Shown: piece by piece, positions 233 through 55,392 of the stretch
Layout: each line of letters opens with the position of its first letter
How positions within the stretch are numbered: position 1 is the first letter of the stretch
IMG/VR virus record: IMGVR_UViG_3300040801_004532
Coordinates: 1-64,000 of that record
Direction: 5' to 3' (one strand)
Length of the DNA: 64,000 nucleotides
The notes under the pieces: generated by a model
The model's input: only the letters and a program-made list of their open reading frames with translations
The model's database searches: none
What the model was told of the DNA's origin: nothing
Position numbers and translations under genes: made by a program

Positions 233-1747
233 TTATGGACATCTCCACCTTTGGAAGTTGACAGAACAAAAATAACCAGAACTACAACCAACTTCTGTTG
301 CAGTTATACACCAATCTCCACAATATGAACAAATGCCTGGATTCAACCCACCTCCCTCTGCGCATGATTCTTGGAAACCGAAAGATCCACTTATACGACA
401 TGTGTATTGCACACGACAGCCAGGGTTATTATAATAGATCTGTTCTGCTCCAGGAGTGCAACCACCCGAGACACCACCATGACAACTACTCCACCCACCT
501 GAAGTACAACGAACAATTCCAAGAACAGTATTGCCACAAATATCTGTTACTGTAATCTGTGCTGCACCACAAGCAGATCCATTAGCATATAGAGTATTGG
601 TTTTTCCATAAGTTCTTAAATTTTCCAATGAAAAACCAGTTCCCGAAACAGACCAATCATAATATCCACAAGTACCTGTTGAATCAACTGCAACTGTTAC
701 ACCAATTTCATCATCACCTTGAGAAATTATATCAGCACTTATATCATTATCCCAATCTATAGCAATACATGAACTACAATCTACTCCGCCTACAGACCAA
801 CCAACAGATTGTCCCTGATCATCAGTACAAGTAACATCAACATAACCTGAAATACTCTCTCCTGCTGTTATGGAGAAACCATTTTCAGTATCATTAAATG
901 TAAAACCACCTCCATTTATTACTGCTTCACAATCAACTGGAGGCATTCCACCATCAACTGTATAATTAATAGTCTGCCCTGGTTCGATTGTTTCTGATTG
1001 TCCAGAAGGTATGGTTGGAGGAGAAAAAAGTGGGTACCCTGGATAATAATCATCTATATCATCAGGTCCCATTCCATAAGTTTTAACCATCCAATTTAAA
1101 AAATAACCATCCTGGTCAATCGGATCTGAAAATTGCACCCGAAAACCATCAAATCTTTTTTCAATTACCATTAGATCATAAGGAAAAGGACCACTTGAAT
1201 AATCTAATGAAAACTCTAAACTAGCTACAACTGCATATTTTAAAGTGGTCATTTCTTCAGAAAAAACAATATTAGCAGTTGTGTCTCCAGAAGCTATTTC
1301 CCATAGACCGTCTGTTACAATATATGCTGGGTTTAACTCTGAACCATCTATTCCAGATGATCCAGATGATCCAGATGTTCCACTTGTACCAATGACTCCA
1401 GATGATCCAGAAGTTCCTGATGTTTTTGATGTACCAGATGTACCAGATGTACCAGATGTACCAGATGTACCCCCACTTGTTCCAGATGTACCAGATGTAC
1501 CAGAAGACCCAGAATAGCCTGAAGAACCAGAAATTCCAGCCTCACATGATCCAGCTTTCTGTCTTACAGCGCATAAGGTTATGAATGTATCTGCTCGCGT
1601 ACTATCCAGACCATATGTTGGATCGCCAGAGATATTTAGATGTTGCCCATCATAATATATCTCCACTTCGTTGGAATTTTCGGTACGACCCATACGTACT
1701 CTTTTATTTGTTCCAACATATAGTTTTCCATTCTTAACCTTGGCCAT
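233..1747 (-). CDS. Tail fibre/adhesin-like protein: GTS triplet tract, shared beta domain, Cys-rich C-terminal tip
   Basis: 504 aa; (GTS/GSS)n tract; C-terminal half paralogous to 4594-6120 and 3687-4571; AGGAG SD. Confidence 0.7.
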   Translation of the reverse strand: MAKVKNGKLYVGTNKRVRMGRTENSNEVEIYYDGQHLNISGDPTYGLDSTRADTFITLCAVRQKAGSCEAGISGSSGYSGSSGTSGTSGTSGGTSGTSGTSGTSGTSKTSGTSGSSGVIGTSGTSGSSGSSGIDGSELNPAYIVTDGLWEIASGDTTANIVFSEEMTTLKYAVVASLEFSLDYSSGPFPYDLMVIEKRFDGFRVQFSDPIDQDGYFLNWMVKTYGMGPDDIDDYYPGYPLFSPPTIPSGQSETIEPGQTINYTVDGGMPPVDCEAVINGGGFTFNDTENGFSITAGESISGYVDVTCTDDQGQSVGWSVGGVDCSSCIAIDWDNDISADIISQGDDEIGVTVAVDSTGTCGYYDWSVSGTGFSLENLRTYGKTNTLYANGSACGAAQITVTDICGNTVLGIVRCTSGGWSSCHGGVSGGCTPGAEQIYYNNPGCRVQYTCRISGSFGFQESCAEGGGLNPGICSYCGDWCITATEVGCSSGYFCSVNFQRWRCP

Positions 1748-1756
1748 TAGTACTCC

Positions 1757-3676
1757 TTATGTATTTTCATTAAGGACAAAAACTCTACCTCTATATGGCA
1801 TTATATGACTACTCGGATCTCCTGGATAGCCAGTGCCTCGATATGAATTTGTAGTAACCCATAGATAAGAGTCAACTCCGTATCCTTCCTTTGGGTAAAC
1901 GGTTGCAGTTGCTATCCCAGTAAATAATCTATCAGGGTAATAATATGCAGCATCCCAGTCGGAAAAAAGATGTGCAGCAACTGGTGAATTTTTAACTCCA
2001 AACGTCATTGTTGAGAGATCATATACAAGAATTGTCGAACCTTGAGATCCTTGTACAGATCCACATACATATAACTTACCTTTATATGGTACTATTTTTT
2101 GTATATTACTGAAAGCAGGTTGTAAACTAATTGTAGGTTCAGCAACAATTTGCCAACTACCGACTCCATCATTCCACACACAGACCTTATCATATTGATC
2201 ATAACCAAGATAATCTCCAAACGCAACAAAAAGATACCCGTTAGCATTACATAGTGCTATTGGTCTCCATTTTGCAGACGCACTTCTGTCTGTATTAAAA
2301 TAAGGAGGAAGATAAGACCAACCGCCTCCGTCAGGATACCATGGTCCAAGAAAGTCACCTGCTGTTTCTGTGAATGAAAGTATAACATACAATGGTCCAT
2401 CCTCTGTAATTGGAGAATATTCCTGACCAGAAACAGTTTCTACCCCTGATAATGACGTATATATAGTTTCTCCTTGAGCATAACGTATCGCGTAGTTAGG
2501 ACCAATAACCCCATATGCATTTTCATCTGTATGAGTGACTATATATACACCTTCTCCAAATTGACGAAATCCACAAACAGTCCAATCTGGCTCTGCATAA
2601 TATGGTTGCCACATTCCAACCCAATATTGCATACTACCACCTAAAAATGGAGAAGTCATTAATGATCCATTAGCTTCATGTAAGTGAGTTCTAGCACCTG
2701 TACTGTGCATATCTCGATCTGTTGAAGTCAAAACACTAATTTCTCCACTTCCGGGATAAGTCCATATATCATGATCTGGGGATAAAACTGAGATAGCACT
2801 CCAGTCAGCGGCAAAATATAACGATCTTGGCGATCCTGCTGATTCACCTACTGCAGTAAATAATGGAGTATCCGCATAAAATGACCCAGATCCAAGCTGT
2901 TTAAATCCGGCTCCAGCTACAGCAGGCGGTGAAGAAAACTCAGGATAAGGTGGTGGAGGCGGAGGTGGAATAATATGGATATTCTCTGACTTTGCCACAT
3001 CTTCAACTAACCAATCAAAAACAAAAGCAGAGGAATCAATTGGTTGATTAAAAGCAACCTTAAAACCGTAGGATGTTTTATCAAATATTAAAAAGTTAAA
3101 TGTTGGGTATGGAACATTGGTCCCCCTGAAGTTTATCGATCCAGTTACAGAATAATATTCTACAATCCTTGGAGTTTCAAAAATAATCAACGATGTTGTA
3201 TCACCGGGATTGAGCTCCAACATTCCTGCTGTAACTATGTTTGTTGAATCGAATTGTGTTACTAATGCAGATGTGCCTGAGTTACCGCTACTACCTGAAG
3301 TACCCGAAGTTCCATCTGTAGCTGAAGTTCCGCTTGACCCTGAGGTTCCATCTATTCCACTAGTTCCTGATGAACCCGATGTCCCAGAAGAGCCACTTGT
3401 CCCACTTGTCCCACTAGATCCAGATGTTCCGCTTGTTCCACTAGTACCAGAAGAGCCAGATGTACCACTTGTCCCTGCACCGCCAGCCTTTACATACTCC
3501 TCAAAGACAGATCTAATAATAAAAGTGTTTTCATTAAGATCTTGTACTCCTGCTGTAGGCGCACCAGATATATTAATAGTTTCACCATCCCATTTAACGA
3601 TAACTTCATTGTTATCACCAAAAATAATGGCTTGGTTTGTTTTGATGTTTAGATTTCTATTTTTATATCTGGCCAT
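1757..3676 (-). CDS. Tail fibre/adhesin-like protein with GTS tract, poly-Pro linker and aromatic beta-rich C-terminus
   Basis: Start moved to ATG 3676 (MARYKNRNL) behind AGGAG; N-terminus resembles those of 233-1747 and 4594-6120. Confidence 0.7.
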   Translation of the reverse strand: MARYKNRNLNIKTNQAIIFGDNNEVIVKWDGETINISGAPTAGVQDLNENTFIIRSVFEEYVKAGGAGTSGTSGSSGTSGTSGTSGSSGTSGTSGSSGTSGSSGTSGIDGTSGSSGTSATDGTSGTSGSSGNSGTSALVTQFDSTNIVTAGMLELNPGDTTSLIIFETPRIVEYYSVTGSINFRGTNVPYPTFNFLIFDKTSYGFKVAFNQPIDSSAFVFDWLVEDVAKSENIHIIPPPPPPPYPEFSSPPAVAGAGFKQLGSGSFYADTPLFTAVGESAGSPRSLYFAADWSAISVLSPDHDIWTYPGSGEISVLTSTDRDMHSTGARTHLHEANGSLMTSPFLGGSMQYWVGMWQPYYAEPDWTVCGFRQFGEGVYIVTHTDENAYGVIGPNYAIRYAQGETIYTSLSGVETVSGQEYSPITEDGPLYVILSFTETAGDFLGPWYPDGGGWSYLPPYFNTDRSASAKWRPIALCNANGYLFVAFGDYLGYDQYDKVCVWNDGVGSWQIVAEPTISLQPAFSNIQKIVPYKGKLYVCGSVQGSQGSTILVYDLSTMTFGVKNSPVAAHLFSDWDAAYYYPDRLFTGIATATVYPKEGYGVDSYLWVTTNSYRGTGYPGDPSSHIMPYRGRVFVLNENT

Positions 3677-3686
3677 TAAATAACTC

Positions 3687-4571
3687 CTATTGTGGGCATC
3701 CCCACTTTTGCAATCCCGGATTAGCACCTGAAAAACCAGAATTATAATATCTACCAGTTTCACATCTTCCGCTTACTTGAGCAAATGGAGGATGACAATA
3801 AGATAGATAAGCTGTTGAACCATCTTCACATGAATATGCTGGATTGTTGCCTGCATTTTGACCACCACATCCCCCACAATATAAAGATCCACTATAGGCA
3901 TATCCGTACTTATATAACCCATCTGGAGAAGTTGCACTACGAGCTATCATACATGTATATACATATGATCTAGTATACGTCAAATTTGAGGTTGGAGTAC
4001 AAGTCAACCATGTACCAGAAGTACATTTAACTTCATGTATTACTTCATTACCACAGGCATCAGTTACAGTAACTTCCGCTGCGCCACAAGCGGATCCATT
4101 TGCATGAAGTGTATTAGTTGTCCCATATGTTCTTGTGTGTTCTAGTGAAAATCCAGTTCCTGAAACTGACCAATCATAATATCCACATGCTCCACCGTTA
4201 ATAGCAATTGTTGTTGAGTCATTTTGAGCAACAGAAGTTCCGCTTGTAATATCGTCCCATGTGATTTCTGTACATGAAGTACAATCTACACCTCCAACAG
4301 ACCATGTTCCAGTTGTATTTCCTTGGTTATCTGTGGCTTGAACTTTAATATAACCACTAATATTTTGTCCCGCAGTTACTCTACAACCAGTTTCTGTTGA
4401 CTTAACTGTAAAACCTGTACCCCCACCCCCAACATTTTGACAATTGAAAGGTGCCTGTCCTTCATTAATCAATAACTCTACGGATTCTCCAGATTCAACG
4501 GTTTGCGGCGATCCACCATCAAATTCTGGCGGAAAGTATGTTCTTTTAAATGTTAGTGATATATTTCCCAT
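3687..4571 (-). CDS. Virion protein with Ig-like repeats and Cys-rich variable tip
   Basis: 294 aa; shares CG(Y/F)YDWSVxGxGFSL...CTSG...WxCP with neighbours. Confidence 0.65.
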   Translation of the reverse strand: MGNISLTFKRTYFPPEFDGGSPQTVESGESVELLINEGQAPFNCQNVGGGGTGFTVKSTETGCRVTAGQNISGYIKVQATDNQGNTTGTWSVGGVDCTSCTEITWDDITSGTSVAQNDSTTIAINGGACGYYDWSVSGTGFSLEHTRTYGTTNTLHANGSACGAAEVTVTDACGNEVIHEVKCTSGTWLTCTPTSNLTYTRSYVYTCMIARSATSPDGLYKYGYAYSGSLYCGGCGGQNAGNNPAYSCEDGSTAYLSYCHPPFAQVSGRCETGRYYNSGFSGANPGLQKWGCPQ

Positions 4572-4593
4572 TTAACTCCTCTTAAATTTTAAA

Positions 4594-6120
4594 TTATGGA
4601 CAGCTCCATTTATAAATATCCATCCAATCAGGTCTTGCTGGCCAAGCACAATTATTCATTGAAACATCGCTATATCCATATTTTTCTAAGAATGGGGTTC
4701 TTCTATCAACTGTTTCACCATCTGGGCAAGTTAGAACATCTTGATCGAATATTCCAGGATCATCACACCCATTAACCTTAACAGATGTTAAGCTATACCA
4801 GCATGCCTGTGCTGTATTTCCACCTGTACAATTTGTACAACTTATAGCACAACCCGAAGGAGAACCGCAATTTATTTGATTTACAGTTCCACATTTAACC
4901 ATAGTACCTGATGTACATTTTATTTTTTCTGTAATAATATTTCCACATGCATCTTCTACAGTTACAGTTGCAATACCACAAGCACTACTACTTGAATATA
5001 GGGTGTTTGTGGTTCCGACTGTCCTTAAACTTCCTAATGAGAATCCCTCCCCTGTTACAGACCAATCATAAAATCCACAATTGGAGTTTGTTGAAGTTGA
5101 ATCAATCGCAATTGTTACTGAGTCATTTGTTCCAATGACAGAAGCACTTAAATCATGATCCCACTCCATAACAATACATGAACTACAATCAGTACCTCCT
5201 GCTCCCCAACTCCCAACATATCTTCCTGCATCGTCTGTTGCACCAACAGTTATATAACCAGATGCTCCCCCGGGGTCAGCAGTTAAGGTACAACCATTAG
5301 TATATGAACCAATTGTAAAACCACTTCCGCTACCAGATTCTTGATAGCAATTATATGGAGGAAGTCCACCATCAATTTCTAAATATATAGTCTCTCCTGG
5401 TTCAACTGAGTCAGGAGAGGTTTGTGAAAATTCTAAAGTTGGATTTCCAATTTGGTCATAGTCTTTTAAAAGAAAATCAATAATATATGTCTTATCAACT
5501 GGACCGTTTACCTTGATTTTAAAACCTGTTGTTGTCTTATCAAATACCAATGCCTTATAAAAAGTATATGGAGGATCCACTGCATAACATTGTGTTATAG
5601 ATACTGTATATTGATTATGAGGTCTTGGCGATGTAAAGGTTAGAGATGCGGTTGTATCTGATGAGGTTGTATCAAATACTAAAGCTCCAGCTAAAACTAT
5701 TAATGAACTTGAGTCTGAAGGAATAAACGATTCTCCGGATGTTCCTGATGTACCAGATGTTCCTGATGTTCCTGGATCTCCCGAAGTCCCACTCGTTCCA
5801 CTCGTTCCTGATGTTGACCCACTTGTTCCTGATGTGCCAGATGTTCCAGAAGATCCCGAAATTCCCGAAGATCCGCCAGTACCAGAAGTTCCTGATGATC
5901 CACTTGTACCCGATGTCCCCGATGTACCGGAAGGAGACCAATCATCCAAATCCTGTCTGGTTACAAACGTATTGCCTGCAGTTCCATCAATACCTGAAAC
6001 TGGAGTTTGATCTGTTCTTACGAAGTAATCATCATAATAAATTCTTCCTTGGTCATTATCACCAAGTTTAATATCTTCATCAGCTCCGAAGAACACATCG
6101 CCTTTTCTAAATTTTGGCAT
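4594..6120 (-). CDS. Tail fibre/adhesin-like protein (paralog of 233-1747)
   Basis: 508 aa; GTS tract; same domain order as 233-1747. Confidence 0.7.
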   Translation of the reverse strand: MPKFRKGDVFFGADEDIKLGDNDQGRIYYDDYFVRTDQTPVSGIDGTAGNTFVTRQDLDDWSPSGTSGTSGTSGSSGTSGTGGSSGISGSSGTSGTSGTSGSTSGTSGTSGTSGDPGTSGTSGTSGTSGESFIPSDSSSLIVLAGALVFDTTSSDTTASLTFTSPRPHNQYTVSITQCYAVDPPYTFYKALVFDKTTTGFKIKVNGPVDKTYIIDFLLKDYDQIGNPTLEFSQTSPDSVEPGETIYLEIDGGLPPYNCYQESGSGSGFTIGSYTNGCTLTADPGGASGYITVGATDDAGRYVGSWGAGGTDCSSCIVMEWDHDLSASVIGTNDSVTIAIDSTSTNSNCGFYDWSVTGEGFSLGSLRTVGTTNTLYSSSSACGIATVTVEDACGNIITEKIKCTSGTMVKCGTVNQINCGSPSGCAISCTNCTGGNTAQACWYSLTSVKVNGCDDPGIFDQDVLTCPDGETVDRRTPFLEKYGYSDVSMNNCAWPARPDWMDIYKWSCP

Positions 6121-6128
6121 TTATCTCC

Positions 6129-7427
6129 TTATCTTATAATAGACCATTCAAGAATATAATTTTCAGAATCAATTGGATTAGAAAATAGGACTGTAAATCC
6201 AGATGTTGTCTTTGATATAATTGCCATTGAATAGAACGAAATAGGATCATCAACTGTATTAACTAAAACTAAAGAATCAATGTTATAATTTTCATCTGCC
6301 TCTTCAGAATAAAATAAGATAGTTGCAGATGTTGAGTCAACTTCCAAAGGTCCTGCCCCAACTTTCTGATATCTAACTCTATTCCACCTTTCGCCAAGAT
6401 GTTTTATTTCAAGGACTCCAGTATGATCTCTTATTCCATAACCAGTAGCCCCAGCAGTATCTCCAAAATTTAAATATCCGTTTTCTTTAAAAAGAACTGA
6501 ATTTTCATTTGCTGAAGCAGAAGTTATTTTTATAGGTCTGTTTCCATTTATATCTACATACCAATCCGTATTTCCATAAAATGCCAATCCATAGTTAATA
6601 TGACCAAAGTTATTAGATGTAGCAAACGTATCTCCAAATTCAATTCCGTCGGTTGTTATTGATCCACCTGCGCCCCTTATTCCAGTTGAAACTTTATTAG
6701 CATCAATATCGCCACATCCAGTAACACTAGTTGTTCCATAGTTACATTGAATTCCAACAGTATTTGTATTTCCATTATCTCCAAATTTACAAGTACTTAC
6801 AGATAAAACATTTCCATAACTTAAAATACAAACACGGTTATCATTTTGGACTTTAACAGATAAATATGCAAATGCCACCCAGGAATTTTCTATAAAAAGT
6901 CCAACATCCCCCTCTGGTATTTCAATTAATACAGTATCTGGATCATAATTTTGACCAATTATGTAGATAGACCCCTCAGTTCTTCCTCTTATTTCAAATG
7001 TTTCTAAATATGTACCATCGGCTAAAAATATATATGCATAGTAACCATTAAGAAATCTTGGAACCTGTGTTAATGCATATGTTATTGTTGCCCAAGGAAG
7101 GGTTATAGTTCCTTCACCTGTTGAATCACTTCCTGTTGGAGAAACATAATAATATAAATCCTCTGATGCTCCAGCTTCAGTATCAATATATGTTTTAACG
7201 GCTTTTTCTGTTGGAACTGCAGTATCTGAGTTTCCTACTAATGTTCCATCAGTTGAAAATTCAGAAATGGCTGAACCAGAAATTAGAGAAAGACCTGATT
7301 GATCAAAGGTTCCAACAACGGACCCATCACTTTGTATTTCGATCTTTTTAGAATTATCGTCAACAATAACCTTTGTATCTAAGTCAAAAATCCTATTGAA
7401 GAAATTCCATCTGCGATCATAGGTCAT
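6129..7427 (-). CDS. Tail spike/fibre protein with probable beta-helix region
   Basis: One EFSTDGTL...AVKTYID repeat; YYVSPTGSDSTGEGT..PWATI..AL motif typical of beta-helix N-caps; C-terminal domain shared with the GTS proteins. Confidence 0.65.
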   Translation of the reverse strand: MTYDRRWNFFNRIFDLDTKVIVDDNSKKIEIQSDGSVVGTFDQSGLSLISGSAISEFSTDGTLVGNSDTAVPTEKAVKTYIDTEAGASEDLYYYVSPTGSDSTGEGTITLPWATITYALTQVPRFLNGYYAYIFLADGTYLETFEIRGRTEGSIYIIGQNYDPDTVLIEIPEGDVGLFIENSWVAFAYLSVKVQNDNRVCILSYGNVLSVSTCKFGDNGNTNTVGIQCNYGTTSVTGCGDIDANKVSTGIRGAGGSITTDGIEFGDTFATSNNFGHINYGLAFYGNTDWYVDINGNRPIKITSASANENSVLFKENGYLNFGDTAGATGYGIRDHTGVLEIKHLGERWNRVRYQKVGAGPLEVDSTSATILFYSEEADENYNIDSLVLVNTVDDPISFYSMAIISKTTSGFTVLFSNPIDSENYILEWSIIR

Positions 7428-52107: not shown

Positions 52108-52339
52108 TTGAAAAACCTCCTACCCATTTAGAATAATTATATAGATTAAATAAAATTAAAACTGCCATTTGAATTAAGAGGAACCAATGAGTTTTTTGAT
52201 AAAAAATATATGCTTGGCACAAAAGACTAATATTAAACACCATGAAACCAGCAGGGCGCTTCTCTCCAATGAGATAAAGTCCAATTAATGTTGTGATAAG
52301 GGAAACTATTTCTAACCACCTTAGAAGATCCATTTGCAA
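52028..52339 (-). CDS. Small membrane protein, PnuC-like half transporter
   Basis: Three hydrophobic segments; G.YL...K...GF...Q......N.Y....W pattern. Confidence 0.5.
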   Translation of the reverse strand: MQMDLLRWLEIVSLITTLIGLYLIGEKRPAGFMVFNISLLCQAYIFYQKTHWFLLIQMAVLILFNLYNYSKWVGGFSNVEWSNLYRGVCKKVRRLGFTSDNKG

Positions 52340-52791
52340 TATCCTTCATAAAGTATATATTTCTTTTCATATTTCCAAAGGGATTTTTGACTGGGGTAAA
52401 TTTTATTGAGATAGTCTTCTTTTACTGTTGGGAAAGCTACCTTATGAACATAATGAGCAATCATATTAACCGAGTAAAAAATCACATCTTCTTTTGAGCG
52501 TCTGGCCAATGATTCTCCAATCGCTCCAAACTCTCTATGATCCGGTTGATATTCATAAACAGGATCTGGAAAATAAAAGGTATTGTTTTGACCTAGAAAT
52601 CGGTCTGGAATTTTGTCTTCAAAAATAGTGGTTACTTGAAAATTTTTGGCTAGATTTTCTGTTTCTCTTCTTCTTTCATCTGAAGTACTCTTTGGATAAA
52701 TAACAACAGTTGATCTACTTGAAGTTAAAACCTCAAAACAGCCAATTAATTCATCATCTGGATGTGGTGCAACAATGACAATTTCGCTCAT
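52321..52791 (-). CDS. PIG-L/LmbE-family N-acetyl-sugar deacetylase
   Basis: VAPHPDDE..G, R..E, PDH, Y.SQ. Confidence 0.8.
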   Translation of the reverse strand: MSEIVIVAPHPDDELIGCFEVLTSSRSTVVIYPKSTSDERRRETENLAKNFQVTTIFEDKIPDRFLGQNNTFYFPDPVYEYQPDHREFGAIGESLARRSKEDVIFYSVNMIAHYVHKVAFPTVKEDYLNKIYPSQKSLWKYEKKYILYEGYCKWIF

Positions 52792-52858
52792 ATAAATCTC
52801 CTTTCAATTATTTGTTACTCATTATTAAAAAAAGATCTCTCTCTATACATTCTCATAT

Positions 52859-52891
52859 TTTTATGTTCTAACTATATATATTAATAACTGA
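52859..52891. promoter_or_regulatory. Back-to-back late-type (minus) and early-type (plus) promoter motifs
   Basis: TTTTATGTTCTAA immediately followed by CTATATATATTAATAACTGA. Confidence 0.55.
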
Positions 52892-52907
52892 TACAGGACA
52901 TTTGGTT

Positions 52908-53260
52908 TGGATAGAAGGGGTTTTCCGGTTTGTAAGGATAGCGCAATCGGATCTTCGGTCTCCTGGTATGGCGGTGCAAAAACGGCGCCGGCACCGGCCC
53001 TACTTCGGATTCTCGAGAAGCGCAATAAGAAATCTCATGAAGCATAGAATATTGTGCTTCGGAGTAAGGACCACAGTTCCTTGGTATTCCGGAAACCAAA
53101 ACTGTAGATGGTATGCTGTGACCTACTCTTCGCCCTCCTGCCGTGTACACAGGCTACATCCCCGGCCTTGCGGATGACTGCCCACGGCCATTCTGGCGGA
53201 CCGTTTTTCACACCGCCGGCGGCGAGATCAAAGGAACAGAATCCATCCCCCTTCTTTCCA
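52908..53260 (+). ncRNA. Unassigned ~350-nt structured RNA
   Basis: Terminal stem TGGATAGAAGGGG/CCCCTTCTTTCCA, long nested stems, GC-rich, downstream of the promoter motif. Confidence 0.7.
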
Positions 53261-53285
53261 TTAACTATTCAAACGGAGGTATAAA

Positions 53286-53459
53286 ATGACCTTAAAAATA
53301 TGTTCCATTTGCAATGAACCGTTTGAAAGTAAAAGTAAGAAACCTTATAAGATATGTAAAAACTGTTGTATAACAAAGGTTGAAAATGGAAACGTAAAGA
53401 ATGCATTAGAAAAACACAAAAAGGTCATTGAGAATTTAAGTTTAAAAACAACTAACTAG
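53286..53459 (+). CDS. Small zinc-finger protein
   Basis: 57 aa MTLKICSIC...ICKNC; GGAGGT SD; below the ORF-track size cutoff. Confidence 0.55.
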   Translation: MTLKICSICNEPFESKSKKPYKICKNCCITKVENGNVKNALEKHKKVIENLSLKTTN

Positions 53460-53470
53460 AGGGGGATCAA

Positions 53471-53776
53471 GTGAGTTTGATAAATCCATTTTCTGAAATG
53501 AGCAGAGAGGAAATTATCACCGGCCAAATATTCTTTCGGGAGAAAGCACTAGCAAAAAAATTAGATTTGACAAACAGAAAGATCTTCCTTATCACAGGGA
53601 TTATTGCGATTCCTCCTTTCTTTCCATTCAAGAGCGAGCATATGTATGATTGTGGAGGGATGAATACTTCATCTGAAACCTTATTATCAATTAATCATTT
53701 AGGCAAAGATATACGAGATCTTTCTTTGGGAAGTACCCCTGATCAGTTAATTACAAAACCAATATGGAGAATTTGA
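53471..53776 (+). CDS. Hypothetical protein
   Basis: 101 aa with SD. Confidence 0.5.
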   Translation: MSLINPFSEMSREEIITGQIFFREKALAKKLDLTNRKIFLITGIIAIPPFFPFKSEHMYDCGGMNTSSETLLSINHLGKDIRDLSLGSTPDQLITKPIWRI

Positions 53777-53841: not shown

Positions 53842-53918
53842 CGGGGCGTGGCGCAGCCTGGTAGCGCGCCTGCTTTGGGAGCAGGAAGCCGGAGGTTCAA
53901 ATCCTCTCGCCCCGACCA
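53842..53918 (+). tRNA. tRNA-Pro(UGG)
   Basis: Cloverleaf; CCTGC-TTTGGGA-GCAGG; CCA end. Confidence 0.95.
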
Positions 53919-54501: not shown

Positions 54502-54558
54502 TTATATTCGAACCCTAAATTATTTTAGAACAAAAAAATAAAAGGGGTTCGACTATAA
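54502..54558 (+). promoter_or_regulatory. RBS-sequestering hairpin with late promoter motif in its loop
   Basis: TTATA-T-TCGAACCCT pairs with GGGGTTCGA-C-TATAA; loop contains TTTAGAACAAAA. Confidence 0.65.
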
Positions 54559-55328
54559 TGATTTGTGAATATTGTAAAAATAAACACGATGGATCATATG
54601 GATCGGGGAGATTTTGTTCTTCAAAATGTGCCAGGGGGTTTTCTACATCAAAGAAAAGAAAAGACATTAACAAAAAAGTGTCGGAAACTCTTAAAGGATA
54701 TAAAACAATTCCTGGCGGAAAAGTTAAATTATGCGATTATGGTTGTTGTAAAGAAGCAAAATTTCAATTGAAAAACAAAAAATGGTGTTGCTCAGAAAGC
54801 CATAATAAATGCTCAGCTGTTAGAAAGAAAAATTCTAAAGGTTTGACAAAATCGCATAAAAATGGGCGTCCTGCTTTTCCAGAAGGAGCTTATTTAAAGG
54901 GGCATGAGTCATTCAAAAAAAATCTTAAAGAAAAATATAAAAAGTTAAATTTTATTGATAAACCTATAGCAGAAAAACGAAAAATTATATTAAAGGATCA
55001 AAACAATAAATGTGCCATTTGTAATATTGAACAAGAATGGAATGATAAACCTTTAATTTTCCATCTTGATCATATAGATGGCAACAGAAAAAATTGGAGT
55101 AGAGATAATCTAAGATTTATCTGTCCCAACTGTCATAGCCAAACAGAAACATATTGTAGGGGAGGTAATAAGAACATATCAAATAAGCAGCTTAAAAAAT
55201 TACTAATAGAAACAAACTTTAATTTTACAAAAACTTTAGAATTAGCAAACTTATTTCCTGGTGGTTATAACTGGAACCGTGTTAAAAAAATAGCAAGTAA
55301 AATGTGCCAGGGTGATGGAATTTGGTAG
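54558..55328 (+). CDS. HNH homing endonuclease
   Basis: MICEYC...GSGRFCS..CA N-terminus; CAIC...HLDHIDG...N...NLRFICPNCHSQT. Confidence 0.9.
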   Translation: MICEYCKNKHDGSYGSGRFCSSKCARGFSTSKKRKDINKKVSETLKGYKTIPGGKVKLCDYGCCKEAKFQLKNKKWCCSESHNKCSAVRKKNSKGLTKSHKNGRPAFPEGAYLKGHESFKKNLKEKYKKLNFIDKPIAEKRKIILKDQNNKCAICNIEQEWNDKPLIFHLDHIDGNRKNWSRDNLRFICPNCHSQTETYCRGGNKNISNKQLKKLLIETNFNFTKTLELANLFPGGYNWNRVKKIASKMCQGDGIW

Positions 55329-55392
55329 ACATGTATGTTTTAGAAGCATATGCCGTAATGGCGTGGGAGTTCAAGTCTCCCTCCTGGCACCA
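55306..55392 (+). tRNA. tRNA-Leu(UAG)
   Basis: Long variable arm; TAG anticodon; CCA; overlaps the HNH 3' end. Confidence 0.9.

What the first reader, a model, noticed from the sequence alone, without database searches (positions are those of the whole stretch)
52908..53260. Unassigned ~350-nt highly structured RNA behind an early-type promoter
Seen: a GC-rich island in AT-rich DNA. 52908-52920 pairs with 53248-53260 (12/13). GATCT(T)CG pairs with CGAGATC. GGCGGTG-C-AAAAACGG-CGCCGG pairs with CTGGCG-GA-CCGTTTTT-CA-CACCGCC. The apical region holds several hairpins (GAAGCATA/TGTGCTTC, ACAGTT..TTGGT/ACCAA..AACTGT, CATCC/GGATG). I see no tmRNA, RNase P or SRP hallmarks, and the overlapping ORFs lack an SD. 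Inference: a new phage ncRNA shaped as a long rod with a multibranch head, possibly a 6S-like polymerase decoy or an anti-defence sponge.
Basis: partly seen in the sequence, partly recalled or inferred. Interest (0 to 1): 0.75.

Follow-up and report, generated by a model that had tools for sequence, protein, structure and literature searches.

The report
New structured RNA in jumbo phages
A 350-base GC-rich stretch at the head of a giant phage's tRNA gene island is a real, previously undescribed folded RNA, kept in shape by compensating mutations in related phages and carrying a loop that could let copies pair with each other; its job is still unknown.

Summary
Window 52908-53260 is a GC island (0.53-0.62 against about 0.30) lying 23 nt behind a phage promoter motif, CTATATATATTAAT, found six times in the genome. 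It matches none of 4227 Rfam families.

Homologues sit at the same locus in four other phage lineages: G005, metagenome contig L085, and two Logan phages known only in part. There is also a diverged 5' fragment (L168) and a decayed remnant (L126). Most relatives lack it.

Comparison supports nine helices:
- 22 of 58 pair columns show changes on both sides, and 94% of cells are paired.
- No column shuffle out of 2000 reached these values.
- There are 16 G-U pairs against 2 A-C, so the RNA is on the + strand.
- There is no coding signal.

A P1-P5-P6 stack carries a 5' domain (P2, P3, P4) and a 3' domain.

The P3c hairpin loop ends in a perfect 8-nt palindrome in all five sequences, kept by symmetric changes, which suggests self-association. 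The closest analogues are ROOL and GOLLD, ornate RNAs beside phage tRNA islands.

It is a new RNA family. Nothing supports a 6S-like decoy or a sponge.

The parts
52872..52885 (+). Phage promoter-like motif CTATATATATTAAT, 23 nt upstream of the RNA's terminal helix
   Evidence: Six exact copies in the 248-kb genome, all on the + strand, each ahead of an SD plus ORF or of this RNA. The same motif sits at the same place in more than 15 related phages.
52908..52920 (+). P1, 5' strand (terminal helix; extends outward to 52903)
   Evidence: Pairs with 53248-53260 at 12 of 13 positions. Six of the ten inner pair columns changed on both sides among G000, G005, L085 and S. RNAalifold recovers it.
52924..52951 (+). 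P2 hairpin (UCCGGUU / AAUCGGA; loop starts UGUAA)
   Evidence: G-C becomes A-U and G-U becomes G-C in G005 and L085. The stem is fully replaced by GUUCGCU/AGCGAAC in the diverged copy L168.
52952..53020 (+). P3 arm. The base pairs the conserved blocks AUCUUC and GAGAAG; the distal hairpin is P3c.
   Evidence: The base is supported by two both-sided changes between G005 and L085. It is weaker in the G000 lineage, with one C-A and a 2x2 U-rich internal loop. Tentative.
52973..52995 (+). P3c hairpin: stem GGUGC/GCACC and a 13-nt loop AAAAACGGCGCCG
   Evidence: The stem differs yet pairs in all five sequences: GGUGC/GCACC, GUGC/GCAC, GCGU/GCGC, CUGGC/GCCGG, CCGGU/GCCGG.
52983..52990 (+). Perfect 8-nt palindrome CGGCGCCG filling the 3' side of the P3c loop; candidate self-pairing (kissing) site
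   Evidence: The same loop position holds a perfect 8-nt palindrome in all five sequences: CGGCGCCG twice, UGGCGCCA, GGCGCGCC and GGAGCUCC. Differences are symmetric. Per-loop shuffle frequency is 0.001-0.033. Self-duplex energies are -15 to -17.5 kcal/mol.
53038..53061 (+). P3.1 hairpin, an insertion found only in the G000 lineage
   Evidence: Absent from G005 and L085. Three both-sided changes against L124: GAAGCAUA/UGUGCUUC versus CUAACAUA/UGUGUUAG.
53073..53105 (+). P4 hairpin (ACAGUU..UUGGU / ACCAA..AACUGU)
   Evidence: The outer helix ACAG/CUGU is invariant and the fifth pair is U-A or C-G. The inner helix is different but paired in each lineage.
53107..53111 (+). P5, 5' strand GAUGG
   Evidence: Pairs with 53243-53247 CCAUC. 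G005 and L085 have AACGG/CCGUU, which is two both-sided changes between invariant flanks.
53116..53119 (+). P6, 5' strand CUGU
   Evidence: Pairs with 53236-53239 ACAG. S has CUAU/AUAG, G005 has GUUCA/UGAAC and L085 has GUCUU/AAGAC, so one column shows four different Watson-Crick pairs.
53120..53235 (+). 3' domain enclosed by P6, with local hairpins (for example CAUCC/GGAUG at 53157-53176) and P8
   Evidence: Folds of G000, G005 and L085 and the constrained fold. The internal helices are only partly conserved.
53193..53219 (+). P8 hairpin CUGGCGG[ACCGUUUUUCACA]CCGCCGG. Its loop (53201-53208 CCGUUUUU) is complementary to the 5' part of the P3c loop (52978-52985 AAAAACGG).
   Evidence: 8 bp in G000 (shuffled-domain frequency 0.024). 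Phage S has the same stems but the loops GAUUGGC / GCCGAUC. In G005 and L085 only 4-6 nt are complementary, which is not significant.
53236..53239 (+). P6, 3' strand ACAG
   Evidence: See P6, 5' strand.
53243..53247 (+). P5, 3' strand CCAUC, directly abutting P1
   Evidence: See P5, 5' strand.
53248..53260 (+). P1, 3' strand
   Evidence: See P1, 5' strand.
53286..53776 (+). Downstream co-oriented small ORFs: a 57-aa zinc-ribbon-like ORF at 53286-53459 and a 101-aa ORF at 53471-53776. tRNA-Pro at 53842 follows.
   Evidence: The 101-aa ORF follows the RNA in G005 and L085, and follows the bare promoter in G006. No terminator lies between the RNA and these ORFs.

Best explanation
Window 52908-53260 (+) encodes a member of a previously undescribed family of large structured non-coding RNAs, 325-353 nt long, found in a clade of uncultivated jumbo phages.

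Shown:
- It is transcribed rightward from a phage-specific promoter motif, as the first element of the transcription unit that runs into the 29-tRNA plus tmRNA island.
- A long terminal helix P1 (12-18 bp) stacks on P5 and P6.
- From that stack spring a 5' domain (hairpin P2, arm P3 with distal hairpin P3c, hairpin P4) and a 3' domain (inside P6, with hairpin P8).

Inferred:
- The long P1 duplex lets the RNA be cut out of the polycistronic transcript by a double-strand-specific nuclease such as RNase III. It then accumulates as a stable, trans-acting RNA.
- The invariant single-stranded blocks and the P3c loop are its working surfaces.
- The P3c loop presents a perfect 8-nt palindrome. This most simply serves loop-loop pairing between two copies (a dimer or higher assembly). 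Its 5' part can also pair with the P8 loop.
- In kind it therefore resembles ROOL and GOLLD, ornate RNAs encoded next to tRNA islands in phages that assemble without protein. Its cellular role is unknown, but it is accessory, because most relatives lack it.
For: - GC island and stability.
- No known family for any of the three full copies.
- Same locus in G005, L085, L124, L125, L122 and L123, and L168.
- Curated helices: 58 pair columns, 22 changed on both sides, 94.3% of cells paired. Sliding the partner by 1-3 nt gives 35-52% paired and 1-5 both-sided columns. 0 of 2000 column shuffles reach either value.
- RNAalifold independently recovers P1, P2, P3 and P5, and also P4 and P6.
- 16 G-U cells against 2 A-C cells fix the strand.
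- Stops in every frame in all copies, substitutions spread evenly over codon positions (45/39/47 and 15/15/15), and no Pfam hit.
- The comparative fold costs only 4 kcal/mol more than the MFE, before any loop-loop term is counted.
- Palindromic P3c loop in 5 of 5 sequences, with symmetric changes.
- Promoter motif in six copies, one orientation, conserved in relatives.
- ROOL and GOLLD are phage-encoded, lie near tRNA islands, and have covarying kissing loops that proved to be intermolecular (paper 10.1101/2024.12.08.627333).
Against: - There are only three full and three partial sequences, falling into two sublineages, so the covariation counts are not independent events. I also chose the helices with the sequences in view.
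- No terminator follows the RNA in any copy. Formally it is a 5' leader, and processing is only inferred.
- No transcript data exist.
- P3b and the interior of the 3' domain are poorly conserved.
- Nothing links the RNA functionally to the tRNAs beyond position.
Confidence: 0.5

Rival explanations
1. It is a cis-acting 5' leader. The fold senses a ligand, a protein, a tRNA or temperature, or sets the processing and stability of the transcript. In that way it tunes expression of the downstream small ORFs and the tRNA island.
For: It lies between the promoter and the first SD in every copy, and no intrinsic terminator separates it from the ORFs.
Against: - P1 closes the element. Neither it nor any other helix overlaps the SD, which begins 14 nt after P1.
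- Close relatives keep the same promoter and the same first ORF with no RNA at all (G006).
- At 325-353 nt, with two domains, it is larger than known riboswitches and leaders.
- There is no match to the T-box or any cis-regulatory Rfam family.
Confidence: 0.25
2. It is a 6S-like RNA polymerase decoy or an RNA sponge against a host defence.
For: It is an accessory element, phage-encoded, patchily distributed as counter-defence genes often are, and sits behind a phage promoter.
Against: - The comparative fold is not a rod with a central bubble.
- Rfam 6S models give nothing even at E<=10.
- There are no repeated binding motifs of the kind seen in sponges (no internal or genomic repeats).
- No defence-related partner was identified.
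Confidence: 0.08
3. It is a catalytic RNA serving the tRNA island, for example a functional analogue of RNase P or another processing ribozyme.
For: It stands at the head of a 29-tRNA plus tmRNA island. It has a complex two-domain fold with invariant single-stranded blocks and a possible long-range contact.
Against: - There is no match to any RNase P, self-cleaving ribozyme or intron model.
- The 'ACAGAA' that recalls RNase P CR-V is simply the covarying 3' strand of P6: ACAG, AUAG, GAAC, AGAC.
- Relatives with the same tRNA island do without the RNA.
Confidence: 0.07
4. It is a DNA-level element, such as a miniature inverted-repeat transposon, a protein-binding palindrome or a replication or packaging site, rather than an RNA.
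For: It has terminal inverted repeats (P1), clean presence or absence between close relatives (G005 against G006), and GC-rich 8-bp palindromes.
Against: - There is one copy per genome, always at the same locus and in the same orientation.
- There is no target-site duplication.
- 16 G-U pairs against 2 A-C show that pairing is selected on one strand only, which DNA symmetry would not give.
- Internal helices covary far from the ends.
Confidence: 0.03
5. It is a protein-coding gene, possibly read through the two in-frame TAG codons of frame 52907-53284 by the phage's CUA-anticodon tRNA.
For: ORFs of 89-91 aa exist on both strands. One frame is open from 52907 to 53284 apart from two TAGs. The phage carries a suppressor-type tRNA.
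Against: - None of these frames is open in G005 or L085.
- Substitutions show no 3-base periodicity.
- There are no Pfam hits and no SD.
- ORF statistics indicate the standard code.
- GC-rich sequence is expected to throw up spurious ORFs.
Confidence: 0.01

Closest known systems
ROOL (Rfam RF03087) and GOLLD (RF01998) RNAs
   Same: They are large, ornate, GC-rich structured RNAs of unknown function, encoded by phages and prophages, typically beside tRNA islands. Their covarying loop-loop contacts turned out to be intermolecular and build RNA-only assemblies (paper 10.1101/2024.12.08.627333). Here the RNA heads a tRNA island and carries a conserved palindromic loop.
   Different: There is no sequence or structure match. 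This RNA is about half the size of ROOL (about 580 nt) and well under half that of GOLLD (about 800 nt). The architecture differs (a P1-P5-P6 stack with two domains). It is known only from a narrow clade of jumbo phages. Self-assembly is not demonstrated.
phi29-family packaging RNA (pRNA)
   Same: It is phage-encoded, transcribed from a phage promoter, and has a paired 5'/3' end helix. This compares with the P3c/P8 loop complementarity in G000 and S.
   Different: pRNA is 120-174 nt, belongs to small podophages with a protein-primed genome, and has its own Rfam model, which does not match. Nothing links this RNA to packaging.
Phage T4 stable RNAs C and D (species 1 and 2) in the T4 tRNA cluster
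   Same: They are small stable RNAs of unknown function, co-transcribed with and processed from a phage tRNA gene cluster (my own knowledge, not tested here).
   Different: They are much smaller (about 120-140 nt), and no similarity was tested or is expected.
6S RNA
   Same: Both are abundant non-coding RNAs with paired ends.
   Different: 6S is a rod of about 180 nt with a central bubble. This RNA is a branched two-domain fold, and there is no Rfam match.

Membership tests
tmRNA | tRNA-like acceptor and T-arm, a tag reading frame, and a match to ARAGORN or Rfam tmRNA models | tested here: not met
   ARAGORN and Rfam find nothing at 52908-53260. They do find the phage's genuine tmRNA at G000:68211-68561.
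RNase P RNA | The P4 pseudoknot with conserved regions CR-I and CR-V, and a match to an Rfam RNase P model | tested here: not met
   No hit at E<=10 in any of three copies. The CR-V-like 'ACAGAA' is a covarying helix strand, not a conserved motif.
6S RNA | A rod-shaped RNA of about 180 nt with a large central bubble, and a match to the Rfam 6S models | tested here: not met
   No Rfam hit. The comparative structure is branched, with two domains.
SRP RNA | The helix 8 motifs, and a match to the Rfam SRP models | tested here: not met
   No Rfam hit.
ROOL / GOLLD | A match to covariance models RF03087 or RF01998 | tested here: not met
   No hit at gathering score or at E<=10 (window) and E<=1 (G005, L085).
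ROOL / GOLLD | Phage-encoded and located next to a tRNA island | tested here: met
   The record is a 248-kb phage. The RNA lies 580 nt upstream of the first of 29 tRNA genes and in the same orientation.
ROOL / GOLLD | Protein-free homo-oligomeric assembly through intermolecular kissing loops and A-minor contacts | not testable with these tools
   Only indirect: a perfect 8-nt palindrome in the P3c loop of all five sequences.
phi29-type pRNA | A match to the Rfam pRNA model | tested here: not met
   No Rfam hit.
Group II intron (domain V) | A 34-nt D5 hairpin with the AGC triad and a 2-nt bulge, together with domains I-VI | tested here: not met
   The only hit is a sub-threshold plastid D5 model match (22 bits against a gathering score of 61, E 0.029) at 53010-53066. 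It spans the lineage-specific insertion and has a 22-nt loop.
Riboswitch / T-box leader | A match to a known aptamer or T-box model, plus an expression platform overlapping a terminator or the SD | tested here: not met
   No Rfam hit, no terminator, and the SD lies outside every helix.

The most novel reading that the evidence does not exclude
This is a new class of phage-encoded RNA that assembles with itself, with no protein needed. An 8-nt palindromic kissing loop (P3c) and a second complementary loop pair (P3c-P8) would drive the assembly. It would be a compact relative, in kind, of the ROOL and GOLLD nanocages, made by jumbo phages at the head of their tRNA islands. It would offer a far smaller model for studying what such RNA assemblies do during infection.
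Probability: 0.3. Interest if true: 0.8.

Novelty: new variant of a known kind. Interest (0 to 1): 0.62.

Why it matters
Large structured RNAs with covariation support and no known function are rare. Each has so far led to new biology: ribozymes, OLE, and the ROOL and GOLLD nanocages.

This one adds a compact example of about 340 nt from jumbo phages, in the same genomic setting as ROOL and GOLLD, namely a phage tRNA island. That strengthens the idea that phage translation-takeover islands routinely carry architectural RNAs.

Its palindromic loop gives a direct and cheap test: does the transcript dimerise, and do compensatory palindrome mutants restore dimerisation? Its small size would suit structure determination.

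Its patchy presence at one fixed locus also gives natural plus and minus pairs of phages for functional comparison.

Tried and rejected
- **Known RNA families.** Rfam at gathering score and at E-value thresholds on the window and on two homologues, plus ARAGORN: nothing.
- **DNA similarity searches.**
  - The isolate-phage collection and the two 185-245 kb relatives G001 and G002 gave no match. I fetched both whole genomes and scanned them for GC islands, tRNAs and Rfam families. They have tRNA islands and a tmRNA but no homologue.
  - An exact 22-mer in IMG/VR gave nothing.
- **Protein-anchored searches.**
  - Portal and 101-aa ORF searches of IMG/VR gave no close relatives.
  - The searches that worked used the 1079-aa neighbour, the conserved 19-mer in metagenomes, and protein look-ups of the PIG-L and 101-aa neighbours.
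- **Chance or unrelated matches.**
  - The two-block pattern in IMG/VR and in the GTDB species genomes gave only chance matches, apart from the known G005 copy in IMG/VR.
  - Most metagenome hits of the 19-mer belong to an unrelated multi-copy element.
- **Profile search of 42 IMG/VR PIG-L loci.** Only G005 and a decayed copy (L126) carry the RNA.
- **RNase P idea.** I raised it because of 'ACAGAAUCC' and 'AGGAUAG'. I dropped it when ACAG proved to be a covarying helix strand.
- **MITE, coding and TAG read-through readings.** Rejected.
- **Terminator after L085's copy.** The hairpin there does not meet the terminator scan.
- **Steps not run.**
  - I did not build a covariance model. The full RNA exceeds the practical model size, and no collection can be searched with a model.
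  - I did not use the count of structure pairs, to avoid typing a 380-character structure string. Equivalent counts, slides and shuffles were run in a script instead.

Full report
**Setting.** The window is the first 64 kb of a 248-kb linear IMG/VR phage record, called G000 here (35% GC, CheckV completeness 79%). ORF statistics say it uses the standard genetic code. Its portal protein is only 26% identical to those of Bacillus jumbo phages PBS1 and AR9, so it is an uncultivated jumbo phage with no close isolate.

The finding lies in a divergent intergenic region.
- To the left, on the minus strand, are a PIG-L-like gene (52321-52791), a PnuC-like fragment and a conserved block of genes.
- To the right, on the plus strand, are a 57-aa and a 101-aa ORF.
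- After these, from 53842 to about 82.8 kb, comes an island of 29 tRNA genes. It includes a CUA-anticodon tRNA, and a tmRNA at 68211-68561.

**The observation.**
- The GC island is real: 0.53-0.62 against 0.23-0.33 in the flanks.
- The plus strand folds at -132.8 kcal/mol, z -3.3. The minus strand gives z -1.9.
- Rfam finds only tRNAs in the window. Even at E<=10 it finds nothing credible in 52600-53600; the best is a 22-bit plastid group II D5 hit against a gathering score of 61.
- 23 nt upstream of the terminal helix lies CTATATATATTAAT. This 14-mer occurs six times in the genome, always on the plus strand and always ahead of a gene start. It is conserved at this position in many relatives. 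It does not fit the sigma-70 consensus scan, so it is a phage-type promoter motif. Whether it is 'early' cannot be told.

**Finding homologues.**
- Direct DNA searches failed.
- The conserved 1079-aa neighbour gave closer relatives (63-71% identity) with the same gene order. The order runs from the conserved minus-strand block ending in PIG-L, through the promoter, then the 101-aa ORF, then tRNA-Pro, Leu, Thr, Arg, Gln and so on.
- One of these relatives, G005, has a 325-nt GC-rich element exactly where G000 has its RNA. It shares the blocks GGGGUUUUCCRGUUUGUAA, CAAYYGGAUYUUC, UCGAGAAG, CUGUARAYGGUAUG, GCRGACC and AAUCCNUYCCCC.
- Its sisters G006, G007 and G008 have the promoter but no such element.
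- A metagenome scan with the 19-mer added a third full copy, L085.
- Protein look-ups of the neighbours added partial copies from Logan assemblies:
  - L124, with the 5' 230 nt; its PIG-L is 92% identical to G000's.
  - L125, with the 5' 99 nt, and L122 and L123, with the 3' 185 nt. These are probably one phage, called 'S' here.
  - L168, a diverged 5' 100 nt.
- Of 42 IMG/VR loci with a PIG-L relative, only G005 carries the RNA. L126 carries a roughly 175-nt decayed copy that keeps only P1 and the 3' end.
- There is no second copy in G000 or in any fetched locus.
- The element is therefore single-copy, fixed in place and orientation, and patchy. This pattern is best explained by repeated loss.

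**Structure from comparison.** The G005 and L085 minimum-energy folds share an architecture that differs from the G000 minimum-energy fold. Anchoring on the invariant blocks gives these helices.

| Helix | Evidence |
|---|---|
| P1 | Six of ten inner columns changed on both sides |
| P2 | G-C to A-U and G-U to G-C; fully replaced in L168 |
| P3 base | The conserved blocks AUYUUC and GAGAAG pair; two both-sided changes between G005 and L085; weak in the G000 lineage |
| P4 | Outer stem invariant; inner stem different but paired in each lineage |
| P5 | GAUGG/CCAUC in G000 and S, AACGG/CCGUU in G005 and L085; abuts P1 |
| P6 | CUGU/ACAG, CUAU/AUAG, GUUCA/UGAAC, GUCUU/AAGAC |
| P3.1 | Insertion specific to the G000 lineage; three both-sided changes against L124 |

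- Overall, 22 of 58 pair columns changed on both sides, 5 on one side, and 31 are invariant. 94.3% of cells are paired.
- Sliding the 3' partner by 1-3 nt drops this to 35-52% paired and 1-5 both-sided columns.
- None of 2000 within-column shuffles reaches either observed value.
- RNAalifold on plain MAFFT alignments independently recovers P1, P2, P3 and P5 for three sequences. It recovers P1-P6 for G005 against L085, with 14 both-sided pairs.
- 16 G-U cells against 2 A-C cells place the RNA on the plus strand.
- Caveat: the sequences are few and fall into two sublineages, and I chose the helices with the sequences in view. The statistics therefore overstate independence.

**Not coding.** All six frames carry stops in all three full copies, and G000's 89-91-aa ORFs are not preserved. 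Substitutions are spread evenly over the three codon positions. The ORF pieces hit no Pfam family.

The strands GGCGGUG-C-AAAAACGG-CGCCGG and CUGGCG-GA-CCGUUUUU-CA-CACCGCC do pair on paper. However, one lies in the P3 arm and the other inside P6, so the helix crosses P5 and P6.
- Each strand also folds locally:
  - P3c is GGUGC[AAAAACGGCGCCG]GCACC.
  - P8 is CUGGCGG[ACCGUUUUUCACA]CCGCCGG.
- The P3c stem is different but paired in all five sequences.
- Enforcing P1, P2, P3c, P4, P5, P6 and P8 costs only 4 kcal/mol relative to the unconstrained optimum, before any loop-loop term is counted.
- What is left of the rod is an 8-bp complementarity between the two loops, AAAAACGG with CCGUUUUU. In phage S the stems are the same but the loops read GAUUGGC and GCCGAUC. 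This is a concerted change. It is seen in only two sequences, and in G005 and L085 the loop complementarity is short and not significant.

**The palindrome.** In all five sequences the last eight bases of the P3c loop are a perfect palindrome:
- CGGCGCCG in G000 and L124
- UGGCGCCA in S
- GGCGCGCC in G005
- GGAGCUCC in L085

The differences are symmetric, which keeps the self-complementarity. Per-loop shuffles reach such a palindrome at frequencies of 0.001-0.033. Self-duplexes are worth -15 to -17.5 kcal/mol. An uninterrupted palindrome cannot pair within one loop, so the simplest reading is pairing between two molecules.

This is the logic by which covarying loops of OLE, ROOL and GOLLD were shown to be intermolecular bridges. 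ROOL and GOLLD are phage RNAs typically found near tRNA islands (paper 10.1101/2024.12.08.627333).

**How it most likely works.**
- Shown:
  - It is a conserved, structured plus-strand RNA behind a phage promoter motif.
  - It stands at the head of the tRNA island.
  - It is accessory.
- Inferred:
  - Release from the polycistronic transcript through the long P1 duplex. No terminator follows it in any copy.
  - Action in trans.
  - Self-association through the P3c palindrome.
- The cellular role remains unknown. A cis-regulatory leader is the main rival. It is disfavoured because no helix touches the SD, and because relatives keep the same promoter and first ORF without the RNA.

**Verdict.** This is a real and new RNA family, in kind closest to the ornate phage RNAs of tRNA islands but not a member of any of them. 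The proposed shape is only partly right, and the proposed functions are unsupported.

Noticed in passing
G000:C1:66784-66860 (outside the window); also G001 178809-178883 and L055:17227-17304: A tRNA with anticodon CUA (amber-suppressor type; ARAGORN labels it tRNA-Pyl) is conserved in the tRNA islands of three related jumbo phages. ORF length statistics nevertheless indicate the standard code, because treating TAG as sense hardly lengthens the ORFs.
   Followed up: partly
G000:C1:68211-68561 (outside the window): A phage-encoded tmRNA with tag ADDYYTEVALAA lies inside the tRNA island. Relative G001 has one too (Rfam 132 bits).
   Followed up: partly
window 14643, 49155, 52872; G000 120584, 153044, 229872: The 14-nt motif CTATATATATTAAT occurs six times, all on the + strand, each 40-70 nt ahead of a ribosome-binding site or of the RNA. 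It is probably the promoter of one phage transcription class, and it does not fit the sigma-70 consensus scan.
   Followed up: partly
L055:4840-5015 (phage G008): At the equivalent place, just before tRNA-Pro, this relative has a different GC-rich element made of two long hairpins (z -5.1). It has no Rfam match and may be another unassigned RNA.
   Followed up: partly
L061, L063, L064, L067-L069, L071-L074, L080-L083, L086, L089, L090, L096, L100, L104, L106 and others: The 19-mer GGGGTTTTCCCGTTTGTAA also ends a multi-copy element in many high-GC metagenome contigs. About 45 nt upstream are conserved and the sequence downstream is variable. It looks like the terminus of a mobile element and is unrelated to the phage RNA.
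   Followed up: no
L126:1140-1315 (- strand), a 223-kb IMG/VR phage: A roughly 175-nt remnant sits behind the same promoter. It keeps the terminal helix and the 3' end (GGAAUAGAAUCCAU) but lacks the 5' domain, and it folds weakly (z -1.3). It looks like a decaying copy.
   Followed up: partly
window 54558-55328: An HNH endonuclease ORF of 256 aa ends 23 nt inside tRNA-Leu (55306-55392). HNH relatives are scattered through the tRNA islands of related phages, as expected of homing endonucleases.
   Followed up: no
window 233-7427: There is a run of tail-fibre genes with collagen-like repeats. These explain several other GC-rich islands in this genome and in G002.
   Followed up: partly
L168:100-165 (- strand): In the diverged copy, a hairpin followed by a U-run (GAGUCCAUU...AAAUGGACUC ACCCUUUUUU) lies between the promoter and the RNA. 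Read-through or a second promoter would be needed there.
   Followed up: no
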